Made by a program: the position numbers and the translations under genes
The notes under the pieces: generated by a model
What the model saw: only the letters and a program-made list of their open reading frames with translations
What the model was told of the DNA's origin: nothing
Databases searched by the model: none
Origin: Asterias rubens
Lineage: Eukaryota
Assembly (NCBI RefSeq): GCF_902459465.1
Contig: NC_047068.1
Coordinates: forward strand, 4,774,001 to 4,838,000
Length of the DNA: 64,000 nucleotides
Direction of reading: 5' to 3'
Part shown: piece by piece, positions 2,586 to 52,285 of the stretch
Layout of the letters: every line of letters begins with the position of its first letter
How positions within the stretch are numbered: position 1 is the first letter of the stretch

Positions 2586-5500
2586 ATGCCTCGATCAAAG
2601 AGACACAAGAAGGTGAAGGCTATTGACCCATACTGCACCGGCAACAGAAGGGCATTATTTTTGGCGTAAGTATACTCGTACTGCATGCTGCTGACCTGTG
2701 TGTGTACACATGTAGCTGTGCTGTAGATATAGCACATGCTGCAGTGTGTGCTGTGTGTAGTTTGTGTTGTAACAATCCACGGAGATCCATGGTTGTTTTC
2801 CTCCACGCATAATGGAGGTGGAGGAATGGTTGTAACTTGTATAAATTGTATCATTGTGTCATGATGATGTGACTTATGCTTGTGCAGACTTTTTAAAATC
2901 CGATCCTTCCCAACAAACGTTTCTAATTATTCTAAATCTAATTCTAATCTTTGGTTGGTCCAAAACAAAAACCGCTAGACCCAGTAACATTGGCGCTGTA
3001 CTCTAGTTCGACCGAGAATGTAAAAATTTTGACAAACTAGTTCGACCGAGAATGTCAAAATTTCGAAAAAAGGAGTACAGCGCCCCAGTTACTGGGTCTA
3101 AAGAATAGCGTAGTTTTGGAAAAAGATTCCGTACGGCGCCAGCACTTTTTCATTAGATATGAAATAATATATCTAATTTACCTCAATGAGATATCCCTTT
3201 TTGTAAAAATCTGTGAAAAAGTGGTGGCGTGATATGGAAAGTTATCCTAGTTTGTATGGAATGTTTATTGTAATAATATTTTACATATTTTATATTAGTT
3301 AAATAAGTTGCCTGCAGTGAACCCTGACCTGACTCCTCGGCGAAATACTGATGCAGTGACTCGGTACTACTACAATACAATTAGTAAATTACACCTCATT
3401 AATACAATGGAGACTGGTGGTAGTCTAGTAGTTGCGATAACGTAACTCTCCTGCCGTCGGCGAAGCTCCCTGCGGCTTTGCCGTTGGCAGAAGGGTAGCC
3501 CACCTTGTTGAGCTGTTAATGGCTCCGCTTTTAACATCAGTCTCATCACTCTGATGAGACCGATGTTAAAAGCGGAGCCATTAACAGCTCAACAAGGTGG
3601 GCTAGCAGAAGGGTTACGTTATTGAAACTAGTACAGTTACTGTAGTAGTGGGGTCCAGTACTACTCTACAGACGTTAACTCCTGAGTGTGTGGAGGGGTG
3701 GGGGCTGTTACAAGTTTTACAACCTATAGTGAGCTTGTTATTAGGGGCGTCATGGAATGTCATGTTAGGGGTTACCTTCTCACTTCAGTCAGTTACATGG
3801 GGTGAATTGGCGCTACCATTTTTTCAATTGATATGAAATAATATAGTATCTAATTTACCTCAATGAGATATCCCTTTTTGAAAAAATGAGTGAAAAAGTG
3901 GTGGCGTGATACGGAAAAAGATCCAAAATGACCAGTATTCTTTTAAAAGGAGCTTGCGACAAAATTTTAGGAAACTCCAGAAATCTTTTATTCTATTAAT
4001 TATTAGAATTAGATATTGTGCAAAATATAATACAACATGAAGTGCTATAAATTTGAAAATGCAACATCCTGCCACTTGTTCACTTGTGTAATGACCAACA
4101 AGAACACACCTTGCTGGGTGAACAACAAACGTTTACTTCATCAACATGACCAAGGCAACGAAGGCGATTGCCTCCATGCCCCCTGGTGCCCTTGAAATGC
4201 TACAGTAGAAATTTACAATTTCCTCATAAGGTGCCCTTTACCAGGGAGAAAATGCTTTGGTGCCCTTGCCCTTGCACAAACAAAGCATAGTACAGGCCTG
4301 GAACAAAATACTGTAGTGTTTTTTTGTCAGGTGTTGAAAATTTTTCCTGCAATTTTGGTAACCGTTTCAGGTTTTGAACACAGTTGAGTCTGAGTCCAAG
4401 CTCTCATTGTAAAGATTGATTTGGGTCAAGCTCAAGTCAGGAGTCACAATAATGTTCAGTTTGAGTGTCGGTCACAAATTCTTCAATAAAATAGAATCTA
4501 AACCTGGAAAAGAAGCTTTTATGGCTCATCAATTGTTACCAAGTTATGCAAACAAATGATCAATCATTAATCAACTCTTATAGGAGCTTATTTCACGCGA
4601 AAAAGGTAGTTACATACATTATCATCTATTTCTGGATAGACTGCACTGAGGCCAACAAGCTACCTGCAGCTCTAAAAAAAAAAGCATTGATTCATGTCAC
4701 CCTGCATGCTCAGTAAAACTTTCATCATTCTTTGTTTTTAAATCTGACAGGCAGGACAAGAAATTTAACAATGCCCCAAAGAATACAAATGAACAAGAGA
4801 TGCCAAGGAGTTTTAAAGATATGCTTGAGGCACAACAGATTGTAGAAGAAGCTATGAAACAAAAACAAAGTAAGTTACTATTGTAGAACAAACTTTAACA
4901 ATTCTTGACTGGGTCAGCCTCCAAAGCTGCAAAGGATATGTGCACCTCTAATCTTAAGCAGTCACGCTTGGTTATTATTAGCAGTCACGCTTGGTTATTA
5001 TTAGCAGTCACGCTTGGTTATTATAAGCAGTCACGCTCGGTTATTATAAGTAGCCAGTTGGATATCCAGTCAAACAAAAGAATTGAATGAACCATTTATT
5101 GTTTACATAAACCTAGCAGAAATATTGATGTAATGATTAAACAAAATTGTGATTTTATTTTTCAATTCTTTTGTTGCTTACAATTGTTTAGAAATTGTTC
5201 AGAAAGTTGGAAGCCTTGAGAGAAATGCAGGAGAATCACATAATCTCTACATGAAGCGTGTAGGTAAAAATGCACATAGGAAACTGGCGCAGGAAAGATG
5301 TAAGAGAGAGAGGGATAATCCTGAACCTGCAAAGCTTAAGAAAGAAATGTCACAGAAGAAAAAAGAGTAAGTCATGTTTAAATTAAGAATAACAACTAGT
5401 TCCTATAAAAGCAATTTACTTTTAGGAAACAAAGAGTGGTGACAAGTTTTTAATCAGCGGAAACATGGTAGTAGGGCTAGATAGCTCATTTTGGGAGCAT

Positions 5501-45280: not shown

Positions 45281-47651
45281 GGTGGCTCATCTGGCAACAG
45301 ACAATTAAGCAGTTGGGTAAACAAATACAAATACAAATGTCAAATGCAAAATTAAATAAAAACAATTATGAAAGTGTACATATTTAAATTGAGGGTTTTT
45401 AAGAAACCCAACAAAACCTGTATCAGTATGTTTACAACAAACTTTGCATTAATAATATAAAGAAAATGTGCGTCAGTTGGTGATCAGTATTATTTAGCTA
45501 ACTAAATATTGATTTGAACAAAAATGGAAATAATATTCTATAAAATAGTATAAATTGACATTTTAAACAATATTGACTAGGAAGTATTTAGTACTACCTA
45601 GTAGTGTACTGTAGTGTATTTGTGAAGGTTTTACGATGAGAACCAAGAACCGCTCAGCCTCGTCGTCAGGTCGTATTCTGACTTATGTCAAAGCCTGTTC
45701 AGTGTTCAGCACTTTTGAATTTGATCATGCCAAAAATAAGAAATAACCCTCCACCAGTTGAGTTAGGATCTCAATTTTGAAAGGTGACATTTATTTTTGT
45801 ATCAAAAAATTACTTACCAGACAGATAACTTGAAGCTCCAAATTGGTAAATTGGTTGGTCGACCTTCAAACTATTTCCAGCGTGTGCATCTCCAGTGTGG
45901 TGAACATAAACAATAACAATAAGTTATTGAATAACATCAGTTCAGCGATCGACGACTCATCGTGGATTTCACAGGTTTTTCCACGGCTAAGTGTTTCCTA
46001 AATCGACTTCATTCACATTTGTTATCACAAACAGCCTGAACATTCCTATTTGTTCAAATTGGCAGCTCTTTACGAGGTTTATTCAACTCAATTTCAGAAA
46101 AATATTAATATGACGAACAAAGAATTGACCAGCAGCTGACGATGTAAACATTAAAATGACGTCATGTAAAATAGTAAATATATAACTTTAAATATTGCTA
46201 TTTAAATTTAGCAAATTTAACTTTACTTTTTGTTCACAAAAAACAACATATAAAAACACATTGTAATATTTTAATACTTTAAGATATTTTTTAATATCAT
46301 TTATTGTCAAATTTGTCATTATTGATTTCTTATAAACTAACTTGGTGAAAATGGCTACATTCAGTGTGTGGCGCTAAACAATCCTTTCCCGCAATATATC
46401 CGAATTGCTAAATGAACCACACACACGGTATGTCGTAGACTTGTGGACAAGTCGTTAAATCGGCCCCACGTGCTGAGATAGTGCTCCCCCGACAACACTG
46501 CTCTCGCGCGAACTCACTGCTCTCGCGCGAACTGATGGCTCCCCGATTTTGACTCCTCATTAACGACTTGTACAAGTTGTCAGCGGTACGTATTCATGTA
46601 TTCAAGTACGAACGCGGTATACCTTCACTGTTGCCGCGGAGACAATCGTGCAGACGAGTCCATTTTTATAAGAGGGTAGTAATAGTTTCTAATACTGTAA
46701 AGCTTGAACCGGAGGGCATCTGTGAATCTTTTTTATTTTGATTTAACTGCTTTATTAGTTGATTAGGGCCTAACTTTACAAAGTCATCTTCAAATGCATT
46801 ACTATTTATCTGTTTAATATCCGTGAGCTGCCTCATGCAAATAAATAATGCCCACGGTCAATGGTAATGGTCCAATGCAATCCTTTAACCCGATGTGTTC
46901 TGCTCGGACTGTGTACACTGGACAAGTTGCAACATAAAATATAGTTTGTATTAATACTACCAGTCCCAAAATTCATTATTTGTTTACTGACAAATGTTTT
47001 TTTATTTTAAGTCTTCATCTAAAAAGTGATTTTGAAAACCATGGTCGACATGTGGAAGTTTGATATGTGAGTCTTGTGGACAAGTTTCACAGGGGAGTCG
47101 TGTGCGCATCGCAGGGATTCCGGAAAATTTCAGTAACTCTTTTCAGATGTCGATGTATTTTAAAGGTATTATAGCTAATCATCGACATACACTCTACTTG
47201 CCCAAGATATTGCAAGACAAGGTTTCATATAGCAGCTGTACTTTTGTTTTGTTTTAAGCAACTGTAACCACGAAAAATACTTCTCACTTCCAAGCAATCA
47301 TAACAATTAATATAAGGCTCAAATAGGGTAAAGACACCGTGAAATGCAAAAAAGGAACAGTGACTCCAATTGTAGTTTGCCTCAAACAAAAAACAAGAAA
47401 CAAATTTATTGATAAATCGATCAACAAATGCAAACCAGTGGTTGAAATAAATAAATTAAATTGAGCAATAAACAATGAAAATACCTTCAGACTAATGGAT
47501 ATTGATGGTAGAAACTGTAAATAAAGAAAATGTGGAGTGTTTCCCTTGCACTTCCAGGTTGCTATATAAACATAGTGAGTAGTTGACTTTTGCAAAACCT
47601 GTTCATTACAAAACACTTTAAACAATTTACAAACTAGGCGAGTGCTAGAAG

Positions 47652-47963
47652 GGTTACAGCTCGATGGCCGAAGGTTCAATAGTCTGAATGTTCGATAGTC
47701 CAAATTGACAATAAGGTCCGATAGTCCGAATTGACAATAAGGTCCGATAGTCCGAATTGACAATAAGGTTTGATCGTCGATTCGGACTATCGGACCTTAT
47801 TTGGACCAGTGAACCTTCAGATCAATGAACCTTCGGACTATCGTATCAAATGTACGGGTTAATGAAACCTACTTCATTTTGGGACTAATGAACCCCCTGT
47901 TATGGGAAATTTGTGCGTTCGGACAATCAAACCTTCGGACTAACGGACCTTCGGGTGGACACC
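47652..47963. mobile_element. Nested MITE with an 8-bp TSD and GGT...ACC ends (Merlin-like)
   Basis: TSD GCTAGAAG at 47644-47651 and 47964-47971. Internal subrepeats GATAGTCCGAA / TTCGGACTA. Confidence 0.65.
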
Positions 47964-48217
47964 GCTAGAAGACCGTACAGAAATGTAAACGGTGGTGGAT
48001 ATGTGAAAACTAACTTGAATGAACATTTTAAATGGGTCTTCTACCTATGTTGCACAACCGCCTAGCCTTTATACATTATCAAACCCTCTCAGTCTGTGCT
48101 TTGGATATTTAAGTATTTGGATTGGAAAGAATAAATTTTAACTAAAATGAGCAAAATAATTGTTGGTAATTGCACAGTATAAATGTCATTCTTACATTTG
48201 GAACCATTCAGAATGCA

Positions 48218-48285
48218 CCATCCACATCAGTCAAGAACTTTGGTGCATATTTTGATTGAATTGTCTATGACTGATCAAATAGACC
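48218..48285 (+). mobile_element. Small decayed L2/CR1 RT C-terminal fragment
   Basis: PSTSVKNFGAYFD* then frameshifted LSMTDQI, resembling the VRNLG..FD..LSM motif. Confidence 0.4.
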
Positions 48286-51200
48286 TGCTTTCGTTTACAC
48301 CAAACTCTTTCCAACTTGTGTTAATCTTACGACTTGAGTTGAGTCTCAGCCTTGCAACGTAACATGCAAACCCTAAGATTAACGTTTCGTGAAAACGGCT
48401 CCAGCTTTGCAAGTCTGTTCGATTTCATGTGTCACAGATTAGGAAGTATGTATCTGACGATTCATAACATCATGTGATTCGCAGCCATGTTCTTTCTCGG
48501 TTAGATTGTTGTAATGGGCTGCTTACAGAAAACCCACATGCATATTTTAAAAGAGACTTCACAGTTTGCAGAACTGGGCTGCTCGTGTTATATTTAGGTT
48601 AAATCGCCGTCGTGATGCCATGCTCCTTCTAAGATCGCTTCATTGGTTACCAATTAAACAGAGGATTGCAATTAAGATTATTTTATTTGTATGAACATTT
48701 CTTTTTAAATCAGGCACCAGAGTAATTTAATGAGTGTCTAGAGTTGTATCAGTTTTTGCGTACACATCTTCACTCCAATGCAGATCCATCTCGGCTAACT
48801 TTTCCCATGACTCGCAGTAAGGCAGGAGATCAAACTTTCACAGTTTTTACAGCAGCTTAGGGGTAGGGGTGGAACGAACTTCCTTCTTAAACGAGGAGTG
48901 TTTCCCTTGCACTGTCAGGCTGCCATGTGACCCTGTGGAGAAAAGAAAGAAACACACAATGTTGACCTGAACTTATGTTGATTGTGTAATACTATCTGTA
49001 GTATGATAGGCTAATACTTATTGCAAGCAAATAAGTTAACGTAAATGTCAGAAAATTGTGTTGTTAAAATCACACATGAAGATACCATTTTTCACGTCAG
49101 GTACCTCTCTGTGCAGACGTCTTACGTGAGCATGAATTAAGCCCAAAGTGGTGACGTCACCTAACAACACAATGTTTTGACCTTCACGTTCACGTGTTTG
49201 CTGGCATAACATGCAGCTCATAAAACCTACCTAATACTTACGGGCTAAAGTGAGGTTCGAGGCAACACCATCACAAATAAAGACTCTCATGTAATTTCAA
49301 ATCTTATTTAAGTTTTAGTGTTTAAATTTTTTAAACATTTTGTTATTATGTTTTATTATTGTTTCTAAAAAAAACAACAATTATGTTTAATTATAAAAAC
49401 CAACAACAAAAACAGTGAATTTGGTACTTTTTGCATTGCTTGAGACTCTACTCTCTAGATACAAAAGTTCCAACAACAATGCAAAACAAGTAACCTTGTG
49501 TAGAACTAGAACTTTAGAAGTAGGGGCTCAATTTTAATAACCTGTGTGTGTCGGTGCAACCGCCACTGGCGATAGTGCTTTTTGTGGAACCATGGAGGTA
49601 GAAACTACCTCCATGGTGGAACCAGTGAGTTATATGAATAATAACACATGTTTTGTTAAGTTTTACTTCAAAACAAAACTTGTTCTTTTAAGTAAGAAGC
49701 CCCAAACCAAGTTACCGGTAACTCCATGGAGGTAGATTTTTGCAATATTATTTTGTCAACGCAAATTTATTAGTAGTTTAATTAAGAAACTTAACAGCAA
49801 GCTCACCTGTTTTGATTTCATGATGCCAACACAGTATGCACCAACCATCACCACTGCCTTGAGCAAGGCTACTGATTTCATCGAATATTCGGCCGGTGCA
49901 AATCATTTGTTTACAAAAGTGTCATTGCCTTTCATCAATCAATACACGCTGTGTGCAGTGTGTGTGTGTTGGCATGATGCATATAAATGGCGGCTTCTTC
50001 TTCTTTTTCCTTGCGACCTGTCGTCGACGTGAGCAGCTCTCTTGCATGTTGCATGCCTTGAGAAAACTGGCTACTTGACAGCTGCTTCTATATCTTGTTC
50101 TTCAAGTTTATCAACCAAGTCAGACCAAGTTAAGACGAAGTTATTTATTTAATATGCACGTCAAAGTTCCCGATGAAAATCCGTACTCAAAAGTACAACC
50201 ATACACACACACGACGTCTAGTGTGTAGGCATAATAAATACACGCTGACAGGTTTGTTGATCGTTCATTCATACATGTGACTTCCCGAACCCATCCAATA
50301 CAGGGTGTACTGTTTGACAGCATATACATGTTGAATATTCATTGATTTAACGACATCGACCAATCAGATGCGTCCGTACGATTTCGGCTGAAGTGCCCAT
50401 AGGCTGTGCACAAACTGATGACAACTTGTACAAGTCGTTAATGAGGAGTCAAAATCGGGGAGCCATCAGTTCGCGCGAGAGCAGTGAGTTCGCGCGAGAG
50501 CAGTGAGTTCGCGCGAGAGCAGTGTTGTCGGGGGAGCACTATCTCAGCACGTGGGGCCGATTTAACGACTTGTCCACAAGTCTAGGTATGTCGTCGTACA
50601 CACATGTACCACACCGTCACACATAGCAGAATCGCTTAACTGACGACTGTGTGTTACTTTTAATTAATAAATAGCTCAATATAAACAGCACAGTCTAATA
50701 ACATTCCTTCCTCCTTGGTCTAATCTCCAGCAGTTGTTACGTCATCTCTCATCGTGTGAACTGTACCTCGCACGCAGTGATGAGAGGATTCTCCAGTCCA
50801 TGTATGAATGGTAAGGTAGTCATTTTCTTTACTTTATTTAGATTAGAACTTAACTTTTGATTGAATAAAGTTTTGGCATGAGGATTGAATGGTAAGCAAA
50901 CTCTAGGGGTCTCGTCATTGTTTGTATAGCATTTATTTAGAAGGCTTTAATTAGTCTTTAGAATTAGATATCACACCTTGTGTCGTGACACAAGTTGTGT
51001 AAAGTGTAAGGGTGTGATTTAGCATAGTTGCAAAGTACTTCTAGAAACTATAGAAGGCTCCCCTGTGTGTGAGCCGAGCATTATTATATAGTTTCTAGAT
51101 AGAAGTAGTTGCAAAGCAATAGCATGTCAATTATGATTTAAAAGGCATTGAATGAACACTTTCGGTAACTACCTCTTTTTCAGAATCTTAATCTTAGGTT

Positions 51201-52285
51201 GCTCAAAATTATTGTGAACTCCATGCTCAGACTAGAGTCAGAATTAGATTTTGAGGTCATGGGTCAGTCCCAAAATCAAGCATCTGGAAGCACACAAGTT
51301 CGTTTGACACGGGAGGGTGTTTGGATAACTTTCCGTATGGCGCCACCACCTTTTTCACTCATTTTTACATAAAGGGATGTCTCATTGAGGTAAATTAGAT
51401 ACTATATTATTTCATATCGAATGAAAAAGTGGTGGCGCCATACGGAAACTTTTCCGGGTGTTTTTTCTTCCAAGTTCAATTATTATCTTGCACATTCGAC
51501 GACCAATTGAGTTCAAATTTTCACAGGTTTGTTATTTTGTGCAATATGTTGAGATAGCCTACACCAAGTGAGAAGACTGGTTTTTGACAAATAACCATAG
51601 TGTCCAGTGTCTTTAAATATCAAACTTATTTTAAAATAGCGCCTCAATTAAAGCCATTGAACACTTTCTGAACAGAACAAAAATTAAAAGTTCACAGATT
51701 TACAAATAACTTACAGGGTTTACAGAAGGTTGGTGAAAGACTTCCCTTGAAATATTTTTCAACGAAATGCTTTACTTTTTGAGAAAACATAAATTCTCGA
51801 TATTGAGAATAACAGATTTATTTTAAACACATGTCATGATGACATGGCGGAACGTGCGGAAACAAGGGTGGGTTTTCCCGTTATTTTCTCCCGACTCCGA
51901 TGACAGATTGAGCCTAAATTTTTACAGGTTTGTTATTTTATATATAAGTTGTGATACACAAAGTGTGGGCCTTTGGACAATACTGTTTACCGATGTTGTG
52001 CGATTGCTTGAAGCTGCTAATAAGTAATATAAATTTTGTCATTTTAATTTTTTTATGGCTCTTGGTCTTGCTTGGTCGATAACAACTGAAAAAGTGGCAT
52101 TTTGCTGCAGAATTCAAAATTTTACCCCATTTAAAATTGCCTTTGCTCTCCAGGGAATTGTCTTCAATGAATTGCTCGGATTCTTACAACTTAAATCATC
52201 ATCTGGAAAATGAAGTGAATTAATCTTGGCTTATCAAAGATCAACAGCTTTCATTATCTCATTCCAAGCAACACAACTGCGGAAA

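What the first reader, a model, noticed from the sequence alone, without database searches (positions are those of the whole stretch)
46427..50593. Young 4.15-kb long-TIR element splitting the NERD/POLD2 bidirectional promoter
It has a perfect 9-bp TSD, TAG...CTA termini and TIRs identical apart from one 19-bp subrepeat. TAG ends with a 9-bp TSD fit AcademH as I recall it; MULE also makes 9-bp TSDs. Each TIR is itself bounded by inverted motifs (ACTTGTGGACAAGTCGTTAA ... TTAACGACTTGTACAAGT), so it looks like two MITE-like modules mobilising the DNA between them as a composite transposon. Putative non-coding first exons end at 45818 (NERD, donor on the minus strand) and 50810 (POLD2). Removing the element would bring the two starts within a few hundred bases. 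The CG-rich TIRs with TCGCGCGA repeats might now supply promoter activity (inference).
Basis: partly seen in the sequence, partly recalled or inferred. Interest (0 to 1): 0.72.

Follow-up and report, generated by a model that had tools for sequence, protein, structure and literature searches.

The report
Young AcademH-type transposon in POLD2 leader
This is a real, very recent and still polymorphic insertion of a 4.15-kb non-coding "cut-and-paste" transposon into the untranslated first exon of a starfish DNA-polymerase-delta subunit gene; it is an ordinary member of a multi-copy family, not a composite of two small elements.

Summary
The element is at 46436-50584, with a perfect 9-bp duplication (GGTATGTCG), TAG...CTA ends and 147/166-bp inverted ends that differ only by one 19-bp unit.

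The composite reading does not hold. At least 30 copies share the whole 4.1-kb body, and 17-20 of them are 98% identical or more. All 18 fetched copies have their own 9-bp duplications. The subterminal 470 and 350 bp are homologous to a 12.4-kb partner. The family's roughly 240 elements are mostly 144-255-bp end-to-end foldback MITEs. No single-end module with its own duplication was found. The paired "bounding motifs" are the normal end architecture and are also present in the partner.

The partner (contig 15) encodes a RecQ-type helicase, with one in-frame stop, and a seven-exon DDE-fold transposase (Pfam DUF6589). The same convergent gene pair occurs in sea urchin and amphioxus. Homology to reference Academ transposases could not be tested.

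Public reads show a precise empty allele in the best DNA holder and an empty site in a related organism. A spliced RNA contig starts at least 40 nt left of the insertion point. The element therefore lies inside POLD2's non-coding exon 1, downstream of the shared promoter, not between the two starts. Promoter activity of the ends is untested.

The parts
46427..46435 (.). Left copy of the 9-bp target-site duplication, GGTATGTCG.
   Evidence: The empty-allele contig of run X1 carries a single copy (table 8, record 1).
46436..46582 (+). Left terminal inverted repeat, 147 bp. It has two 19-bp units, each holding TCTCGCGCGA.
   Evidence: It is 98.7-100% identical to the ends of other copies and of the 12.4-kb partner.
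46439..46452 (.). Terminal near-palindromic motif ACTTGTGGACAAGT. This is the probable outer transposase-binding site (inferred).
   Evidence: It sits at the same position in the autonomous copy.
46566..46577 (.). Inner palindromic motif ACTTGTACAAGT, in inverted orientation as judged by its TTAACG flank. This is the probable inner binding site (inferred).
   Evidence: It sits at the same position (132) in the autonomous copy and is absent from the foldback MITEs.
46583..50418 (.). Non-coding body of the family. There is no open frame over 159 aa. About 320 bp on the left and 200 bp on the right beyond the inverted ends are 84-87% identical to the subterminal parts of the partner. The rest is family-specific and contains stretches that also occur elsewhere as separate repeats.
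47070..47085 (.). A third copy of the terminal motif (CTTGTGGACAAG) inside the body.
   Evidence: (family D6).
50419..50584 (-). Right terminal inverted repeat, 166 bp. It has three 19-bp units, with TCGCGCGAGA at 50471, 50490 and 50509. Most other copies have two units at both ends.
50585..50593 (.). Right copy of the 9-bp target-site duplication.
46387..46435 (+). The first 49 nt or more of POLD2 non-coding exon 1 as seen on the empty allele. In this assembly the insertion cuts it off from the rest of the exon. An E2F-like TTTCCCGC lies at 46385-46392.
   Evidence: Record 14 of run X4 has 40 letters before 50585, and X4 depth in bin 46240-46439 fits them lying on 46387-46426. The motif is read, and its E2F assignment is an inference.
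50594..50810 (+). The remainder of POLD2 non-coding exon 1, with its splice donor (G|GTAAGG) at 50810/50811.
   Evidence: (X4 record 14 lies on 50585-50811 and then leaves; depth 526 against 7 in the next bin).
45818..46110 (-). NERD-gene non-coding exon 1. The donor GTAAGT is at 45817 and downward on the minus strand. The 5' end lies somewhere between about 46040 and 46200. A CRE palindrome TGACGTCA is at 46158-46165.
   Evidence: (X4 depth 435 in 45840-46039 and 0 in 46040-46239; X23 RNA reads reach at least 46107).

Best explanation
Window 46436-50584 is one copy of a 4.1-kb non-autonomous DNA transposon family of the starfish genome. The element cannot move itself. Its 147-166-bp inverted ends each carry two inverted copies of a short palindromic motif. 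These ends are the same as those of a single 12.4-kb element on contig 15, which encodes a DDE-fold transposase (Pfam DUF6589) and a RecQ-type helicase.

That transposase, or an allele or sister copy of it, is inferred to bind the ends, cut the element out and paste it into a target cut with a 9-bp stagger. This gives the 9-bp duplications seen at every copy. The family also includes about a hundred or more 144-255-bp foldback MITEs made only of the two ends. A helicase, a DDE transposase and 9-bp duplications together are the published definition of the AcademH lineage of the Academ superfamily.

This copy inserted very recently, about 49 nt into the non-coding first exon of POLD2. That is just downstream of the promoter POLD2 shares head-to-head with a NERD-domain gene. 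The insertion is not fixed. An exact empty allele is present in reads of the best-matching DNA sample, and the site is empty in a related organism.

On the filled allele the native POLD2 start is separated from the rest of exon 1 by 4158 bp. How, or whether, that allele makes normal POLD2 mRNA is unknown.
For: Structure.

Family:
- The 28-mer terminus occurs 484 times in the genome (240 forward, 244 reverse; the reversed control gives 0).
- 16 full-length copies are 97.0-99.3% identical to the window copy by BLAST over the whole length.
- Mean pairwise substitution divergence is 0.68%. The window copy is 0.34% from the majority sequence.
- Interior probes find about 30-36 copies.
- 18 of 18 fetched copies, the partner, and 10 of 11 MITEs have perfect, mutually different 9-bp duplications.

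Partner at G000 contig 15, 14040377-14052764:
- The ends are 98.7-99.3% identical and the subterminal parts 84-87% identical, with the same motif layout.
- The helicase exons hit DEAD, Helicase_C and RecQ_Zn_bind. Their best solved relatives are RecQ, WRN and BLM at about 1e-23.
- The transposase exons are collinear with residues 11-943 of a 946-aa sea-urchin homologue, without stops, and hit DUF6589.
- The model of that homologue (pLDDT 81) has an RNase-H-like core plus a helical insertion. It aligns best to P-element transposase (Z 10.0, 302 residues), Hermes (8.7), ISCth4, RAG1 and Transib.
- Conserved acidic residues lie on strand 1 (D150 of DNVD), after strand 4 (the D of the GGDxLT motif, seen in the alignment consensus but not flagged as 90% invariant) and on the late helix (E586).
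- The convergent DUF6589 and helicase pair recurs at three more loci in this genome. It also occurs in Branchiostoma floridae and Lytechinus variegatus, in the latter inside inverted ends of at least 139 nt.
- A published statement says AcademH makes 9-10-bp duplications and encodes a helicase (PMC10045372, citing Kojima 2020).

Locus:
- X1 contig record 1 joins 46426 directly to 50585.
- X1 holds both letters at 46092 and 46259, so two haplotypes are present.
- X5 contig record 16 bridges 46397 to 50606 with 31 letters between.
- X4 RNA contig record 14 starts 40 letters before 50585 and is spliced at 50811.
Against: - Mobilisation by the contig-15 element is inferred from shared ends, not shown.
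- That copy has an in-frame TAG in the helicase zinc-binding motif. It is also the only close copy in the assembly. The active source may therefore be another allele, or may be lost.
- DUF6589 could not be compared directly with reference Academ transposases, because Repbase and the defining paper are not available here.
- The 40 upstream letters of the X4 RNA contig were not displayed. Their position on 46387-46426 is inferred from the exact breakpoint at 50585 and from depth arithmetic.
- That RNA comes from a differently labelled organism, not from the assembled individual. No RNA of a filled allele was seen.
Confidence: 0.8

Rival explanations
1. One reading: two independent MITE-like modules (each inverted end is a small element bounded by inverted motifs) landed around a piece of DNA and now move it as a composite transposon.
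For: Each end does carry the terminal motif and an inverted inner copy. Small MITEs with these ends are abundant.
Against: - The 3.8-kb interior is the same in at least 30 copies at different loci, each with its own 9-bp duplication.
- Its subterminal parts are homologous to the autonomous element.
- The same two-motif end is present in the autonomous element.
- The MITEs are left-end plus right-end foldbacks that stop before the inner motif.
- Five unpaired ends showed no matching 9-mer within 6 kb.
- The related organism's site lacks both the ends and the interior.
Confidence: 0.03
2. It is a non-autonomous Mutator-like (MULE/MuDR) element, which also has long inverted ends and 9-bp duplications.
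For: 9-bp duplications and long inverted ends.
Against: The only element sharing these ends encodes a protein that hits DUF6589 and no MULE or Mutator family, plus a RecQ-type helicase. Its fold aligns best to P-element and hAT transposases. Mu transposase scores only Z 5.3.
Confidence: 0.04
3. The helicase and DUF6589 elements are a separate DDE lineage that merely resembles AcademH (same accessory gene and duplication length) and are not part of Academ.
For: No direct comparison with reference Academ transposases was possible. XPG nuclease domains, which mark the other Academ lineage, were not found next to DUF6589 in this genome. Kolobok lineages also carry RecQ helicases (PMC9587614).
Against: - 9-10-bp duplications plus a helicase are the published hallmark of AcademH.
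- Kolobok makes 4-bp TTAA duplications (own knowledge).
- DUF6589 is reported from Puccinia striiformis, and Pucciniomycotina is where Academ is most abundant.
- Other readers of this genome independently called 2010-aa DUF6589-bearing frames Academ-like. Those are unchecked AI notes.
Confidence: 0.13
4. The element lies between the two transcription starts. POLD2 in this species starts to the right of 50593, and the 40 extra letters of the RNA contig are an artefact.
For: The 40 letters were not displayed. RNA contigs cannot define true 5' ends. No RNA from the assembled individual was available.
Against: The RNA contig's match begins exactly at the first base after the element (50585), the same breakpoint as the DNA empty-allele contig. 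X4 depth in bin 46240-46439 is 145.6. That equals 40 nt at the contig's depth of 611 plus the 4 nt of the element end. Raw RNA reads of another organism give about 1.5x there, as expected for 49 nt of exon. An E2F-like site lies at 46385-46392.
Confidence: 0.12

Closest known systems
AcademH lineage of the Academ superfamily of DNA transposons (Kojima 2020, Mobile DNA 11:15; known here only through citing papers, PMC10045372 and PMC10799480)
   Same: 9-bp target-site duplications, terminal inverted repeats, and an autonomous partner that encodes a DDE-type transposase and a separate SF2/RecQ-like helicase. It occurs in animals.
   Different: The window copy is a non-coding 4.1-kb derivative. 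Homology of the DUF6589 transposase to reference Academ proteins was not testable here. I found no paper in the searchable library describing such a family with abundant foldback MITEs and a segregating insertion.
Mutator-like elements (MuDR/MULE)
   Same: Long inverted ends and 9-bp duplications. Non-autonomous derivatives have unrelated interiors.
   Different: The partner's transposase gives no MULE or Mutator domain hit. A helicase gene is present. The fold is nearer to P-element and hAT transposases than to Mu.
KolobokH and Kolobok-1_CCri (Kolobok elements with a RecQ helicase; PMC9587614)
   Same: A DDE transposase together with a RecQ-family helicase.
   Different: Kolobok makes 4-bp TTAA duplications (own knowledge). 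Here all are 9 bp with no fixed sequence.
Foldback MITEs and internally replaced non-autonomous elements of hAT, Mutator and P families (for example Ds relative to Ac)
   Same: Short derivatives keep only the ends. Mid-size derivatives keep the ends plus subterminal parts and are mobilised in trans.
   Different: None in principle. This is the ordinary relation between autonomous and non-autonomous elements, here in an Academ-type family.

Membership tests
AcademH (Academ superfamily) | Target-site duplications of 9 or 10 bp | tested here: met
   The window copy, 18 of 18 other copies, the 12.4-kb partner and 10 of 11 MITEs have 9-bp duplications. The definition is quoted in PMC10045372.
AcademH (Academ superfamily) | The autonomous element encodes a helicase besides the transposase | tested here: met
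   The partner's plus-strand exons hit DEAD, Helicase_C and RecQ_Zn_bind and RecQ/WRN/BLM at 1e-23. The pair recurs in this genome, in amphioxus and in sea urchin. The only close copy has one in-frame TAG.
AcademH (Academ superfamily) | The transposase is a DDE/RNase-H-like enzyme | tested here: met
   The predicted structure has a b1-b2-b3-a-b4-a-b5 core with a helical insertion. It scores Z 10.0 to P-element transposase and 8.7 to Hermes. Acidic residues are conserved in the expected places.
AcademH (Academ superfamily) | The transposase clusters with reference Academ/AcademH transposases (Repbase) | not testable with these tools
   Repbase sequences and the defining paper are not held. There is only indirect support: DUF6589 is reported from a rust fungus, the group where Academ is most abundant.
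MuDR/MULE | A Mutator-type transposase (MULE/Transposase_mut domains) | tested here: not met
   Pfam scans of the partner's exons and of eight full-length homologues give only DUF6589 and a C2H2 finger.
Kolobok (KolobokH) | 4-bp TTAA target-site duplication | tested here: not met
   All duplications are 9 bp and differ in sequence.
Composite (compound) transposon | Two independently mobile end modules, and a cargo that differs between pairs | tested here: not met
   The interior is the same in at least 30 copies. No single-end module with its own duplication was found. The end architecture is shared with the autonomous element.
Polymorphic (unfixed) insertion | An exact empty site with one copy of the duplicated 9-mer exists in the species | tested here: met
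   Contig record 1 of run X1 joins 46426 to 50585, with 2 other letters in 1500. Both letters are present at 46092 and 46259 in that run. Whether X1 is the assembled individual is not known.

The most novel reading that the evidence does not exclude
The family is transposing today, which would make it the first defined natural AcademH system with a master copy, a 4-kb derivative and MITEs. On the filled allele the right end would then act as a replacement promoter for the essential POLD2 gene. That end carries three near-copies (TCGCGCGAGA) of the vertebrate CGCG element TCTCGCGAGA, which drives bidirectional transcription in TATA-less promoters (PMC6192621).
Probability: 0.1. Interest if true: 0.65.

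Novelty: new member of a known kind. Interest (0 to 1): 0.42.

Why it matters
Academ and AcademH are among the least studied DNA transposon groups, and I know of no shown transposition. This starfish family offers several things together:
- near-identical copies;
- a segregating insertion;
- a nearly intact two-gene partner;
- clear candidate binding motifs.

It is therefore a practical starting point for testing how a helicase-assisted DDE transposase works and why it makes 9-bp duplications.

Locally, the insertion is a natural allele that detaches the promoter and first 49 nt of an essential replication gene from the rest of its leader. It can be used to ask how much disruption such a gene tolerates, or whether the element's ends supply transcription.

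Tried and rejected
- Composite model: rejected.
- Coding capacity: no open frame over 159 aa in the element.
- Single-end modules: of 8 termini that looked unpaired at 2 mismatches or fewer, 3 proved to be older MITEs with a diverged second end. The other 5 have no second end and no matching 9-mer within 6 kb. They are probably truncated or belong to longer relatives.
- Target preference: 32 duplications show only a weak AT-rich, roughly symmetric bias and no fixed sequence.
- Defining AcademH paper: not held, by PMC id or by DOI.
- XPG nuclease next to DUF6589, as a link to the AcademX lineage: only three host-type XPG_I loci, none adjacent, so this was uninformative.
- Foldseek against PDB alone gave no hit at E 0.001 or below. 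The best was Hermes at E 0.013. The VIA re-alignment gave the transposase matches.
- Fungal homologues: the top 150 representatives that were named are all animal proteins, so the fungal side of AcademH was not examined.
- RNA of the filled allele: none available. Reads inside the element come from all copies and say nothing about this locus.
Full report
**Observation**

The stretch is as described.
- GGTATGTCG stands at 46427-46435 and at 50585-50593.
- The element between them (46436-50584, 4149 bp) begins TAG and ends CTA.
- Its inverted ends (46436-46582 and 50419-50584) are identical except that the right one has a third copy of a 19-bp unit.
- The 23-nt terminus occurs only at these two places in the window, against none in 100 shuffles.
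- No open frame exceeds 159 aa.

**It is one copy of a family, not a composite**

The genome is 417.6 Mb in 150 contigs. Earlier notes of this scan call it the common starfish.

Termini:
- The 28-nt terminus occurs 484 times (240 forward, 244 reverse). The reversed control gives 0.
- Of the first 100 places listed, 52 form 26 pairs under 600 bp apart, all but one 117-255 bp. Ten form five pairs about 4.1 kb apart. The remaining 38 are unpaired at 2 mismatches or fewer.

Full-length copies:
- Sixteen fetched copies align to the window copy over their whole length at 97.0-99.3% by BLAST.
- Mean pairwise substitution divergence is 0.68%. The window copy is 0.34% from the majority sequence and 0.17% from its nearest copy.
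- Two interior probes find about 30-36 copies, 17-20 of them at 98% or more.

Duplications:
- Every one of 18 fetched copies has a perfect 9-bp duplication, all different. These include a 1352-bp deletion derivative and two copies with inserts.

MITEs:
- Twelve short elements were read. Most are 144-255-bp near-palindromes made of a left and a right end joined before the inner motif.
- Ten of the eleven under 400 bp have perfect 9-bp duplications.

Unpaired ends:
- Of eight apparently unpaired ends, three are older MITEs with a diverged partner.
- The other five have neither a second end nor a matching 9-mer within 6 kb.
- So no "solo module" of one end bounded by the two motifs, with its own duplication, was seen.

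End architecture:
- The two motifs are the near-palindrome ACTTGTGGACAAGT at position 4-17 and ACTTGTACAAGT at 131-142 in inverted orientation.
- They sit at the same positions in the 12.4-kb coding element.
- They are therefore the normal end architecture of the family and most simply two transposase-binding sites. That role is an inference.

**The partner**

One pair of ends on contig 15 (14040377-14052764) is 12,388 bp apart and flanked by GTAAATCAG on both sides.
- Its ends are 98.7-99.3% identical to the window's.
- The next 320 and 200 bp are 84-87% identical, and a few further patches match. The rest of the 4.1-kb body is unrelated.

On one strand it carries helicase exons.
- They hit DEAD, Helicase_C and RecQ_Zn_bind.
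- The best solved relatives are RecQ, WRN and BLM at about 1e-23.
- This reading frame has one in-frame TAG between the CRRQLLL and CCDNC parts of the zinc-binding motif.

On the other strand, convergent with the helicase, lie six to seven exons.
- They are collinear with residues 11-943 of a 946-aa sea-urchin protein, without stops.
- They hit Pfam DUF6589.
- The last exon alone has 2073 relatives at E 0.001 or below.
- The named full-length relatives are uncharacterised 740-1130-aa proteins of sea urchins, a brittle star, amphioxus and a scallop. They show only DUF6589 and an inserted C2H2 finger.

A model of the sea-urchin protein (residues 240-946, pLDDT 81, pTM 0.78) has the RNase-H-like strand-helix order, followed by a helical insertion and a late helix.
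- D150 of the DNVD motif (90% or more conserved) falls on strand 1, and the invariant E586 on the late helix. The consensus GGDxLT motif lies just after strand 4; its D was not among the columns flagged as 90% invariant.
- Foldseek alone was weak: Hermes at E 0.013.
- Re-alignment gave P-element transposase at Z 10.0 (302 residues aligned), Hermes 8.7, ISCth4 7.9, RAG1 7.4 and Transib 6.9.
- The protein is therefore a DDE-type transposase by fold.

The convergent transposase and helicase pair recurs in several places.
- It occurs at three more, diverged loci in this genome.
- It occurs in Branchiostoma floridae, inside a formin intron.
- It occurs in Lytechinus variegatus, there bounded by inverted ends of at least 139 nt at 99%.

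**Classification**

A citing paper states that AcademH elements make 9- or 10-bp duplications and encode a helicase, while AcademX makes 3-4 bp and encodes a nuclease (PMC10045372).
- Three of four defining features are met here.
- The fourth, clustering with reference Academ transposases, could not be tested. Neither Repbase nor the defining paper is available.
- MULE fails on the transposase. Kolobok lineages with RecQ helicases (PMC9587614) fail on duplication length.
- I put AcademH membership at about 0.8.
- DUF6589 also occurs in this genome inside intronless frames of up to 2010 aa. Other notes of this scan call those frames Academ-like. That agrees with my reading but is unchecked.

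**The locus**

Reads and contigs of four public runs were laid on 45640-51639.
- Run X1 is the best DNA holder and possibly the assembly's own sample. It has a 3212-nt contig lying on 45640-46426 and, without a gap, on 50585-51297. That is the exact empty site with one copy of the 9-mer.
- The same run holds both letters at 46092 and 46259. The empty contig carries the non-reference ones. Two haplotypes are therefore present, which fits a filled/empty heterozygote.
- Run X5 is DNA of a differently labelled, closely related organism. One contig bridges 46397 to 50606 with 31 letters between.
- Run X4 behaves as RNA, with exon-like depth steps. It has a 1531-nt contig whose letters 41-267 lie on 50585-50811 with no difference, and which then leaves the stretch.
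- The match starts exactly at the first base after the element, with 40 letters before it. X4 depth in bin 46240-46439 (145.6) equals 40 nt at that contig's depth (611) plus the first 4 nt of the element.
- Raw RNA reads of run X23 give about 1.5x in that bin, as expected for about 49 nt of an exon covered about 5x.
- On empty alleles, POLD2 exon 1 thus begins at or left of about 46387, at an E2F-like TTTCCCGC (46385-46392; the assignment is an inference).
- NERD exon 1 runs from 45818 up to about 46040-46200. X4 depth is 435, then 0. X23 reads reach at least 46107. A CRE palindrome lies at 46158-46165.
- The two 5' ends are about 250-350 bp apart, which is a normal head-to-head promoter.

The element lies about 49 nt inside POLD2's leader, not between the starts. 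Pfam hits support the gene identities: NERD in the two upstream minus-strand frames and DNA_pol_D_N in the first coding exon.

**What is shown and what is inferred**

Shown:
- the structure of the element;
- family membership and the constant interior;
- 9-bp duplications throughout;
- the empty allele and the empty related site;
- the coding content and fold of the partner.

Inferred:
- that the partner's proteins move the 4.1-kb element and the MITEs;
- that the two motifs are binding sites;
- that the helicase is needed;
- the exact POLD2 start.

Unknown:
- expression from the filled allele;
- whether the ends promote transcription.

On the last point, the window's ends carry TCTCGCGCGA (two copies) and TCGCGCGAGA (three copies). 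Each is one letter away from the vertebrate CGCG element TCTCGCGAGA, which induces bidirectional transcription (PMC6192621). Older MITEs of the family carry the exact 10-mer. This is a lead only.

**Verdict**

This is a real, young, segregating insertion of a non-autonomous AcademH-type transposon in the leader exon of POLD2. It is a new member of a known kind. The composite model and the "between the two starts" placement are not supported.

Noticed in passing
window 51240-51640: An extremely high-copy repeat in POLD2 intron 1. Contig depth runs into the millions in all three contig runs, with about 550-2300 per strand in the raw RNA reads. It contains an inverted repeat at 51323-51354 / 51424-51455. 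Most joints and loose ends in the read tables come from it.
   Followed up: no
G000 contig 15, 14040377-14052764 (L050+L051, position 3555-3557 of the joined locus): The only close coding partner in the assembly has one in-frame TAG in the helicase, between the two halves of the RecQ zinc-binding motif. The transposase exons show no stop.
   Followed up: partly
window 46918-50388 (run X4, table 8): RNA-like contigs of a differently labelled organism cover most of the 4.1-kb body, with only 1-10 differences per 300-1000 nt. The family is therefore present, young and transcribed there too. The DNA of the third organism (X5) has only copies 5-7% diverged.
   Followed up: no
window 48401-48846 and 49022-49206: Two stretches of the element's body also occur elsewhere as separate repeats. 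The first is 85% identical to four other loci. The second is an inverted-repeat unit with 512 candidate places. The progenitor copy had therefore already picked up other repeats.
   Followed up: partly
window 47687-47801: Three tandem 26-bp units are followed by an inverted copy, forming a small foldback inside the element. The same words recur at 47918-47951.
   Followed up: no
G000 contig 111, 3026-23506 (L052-L054): Two 94% copies of the 4.1-kb family lie in inverted orientation, each truncated at the same internal points. They flank about 14 kb that holds a 974-aa retroelement-like frame. This is possibly a rearranged or nested insertion.
   Followed up: no
G000 contigs 64, 24, 32, 15 and 1: A second, weaker class of DUF6589 matches (43-47 bits) lies inside intronless frames of up to 2010 aa. 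This is probably the 10.9-kb Academ-like family that other notes of this scan describe. No XPG_I domain was found beside them.
   Followed up: partly
L063 (G000 contig 3, 644915-647301): A 239-bp MITE has a second right end 1.9 kb further on, followed by the same flank (ATCCATTGC...). This could be a local duplication or an aberrant transposition.
   Followed up: no
L059, L061, L062, L064 (MITEs): An older MITE subfamily has the exact palindrome TCTCGCGAGA in each end. The young subfamily, including the window copy, has TCTCGCGCGA units instead, in variable number (2 or 3).
   Followed up: no
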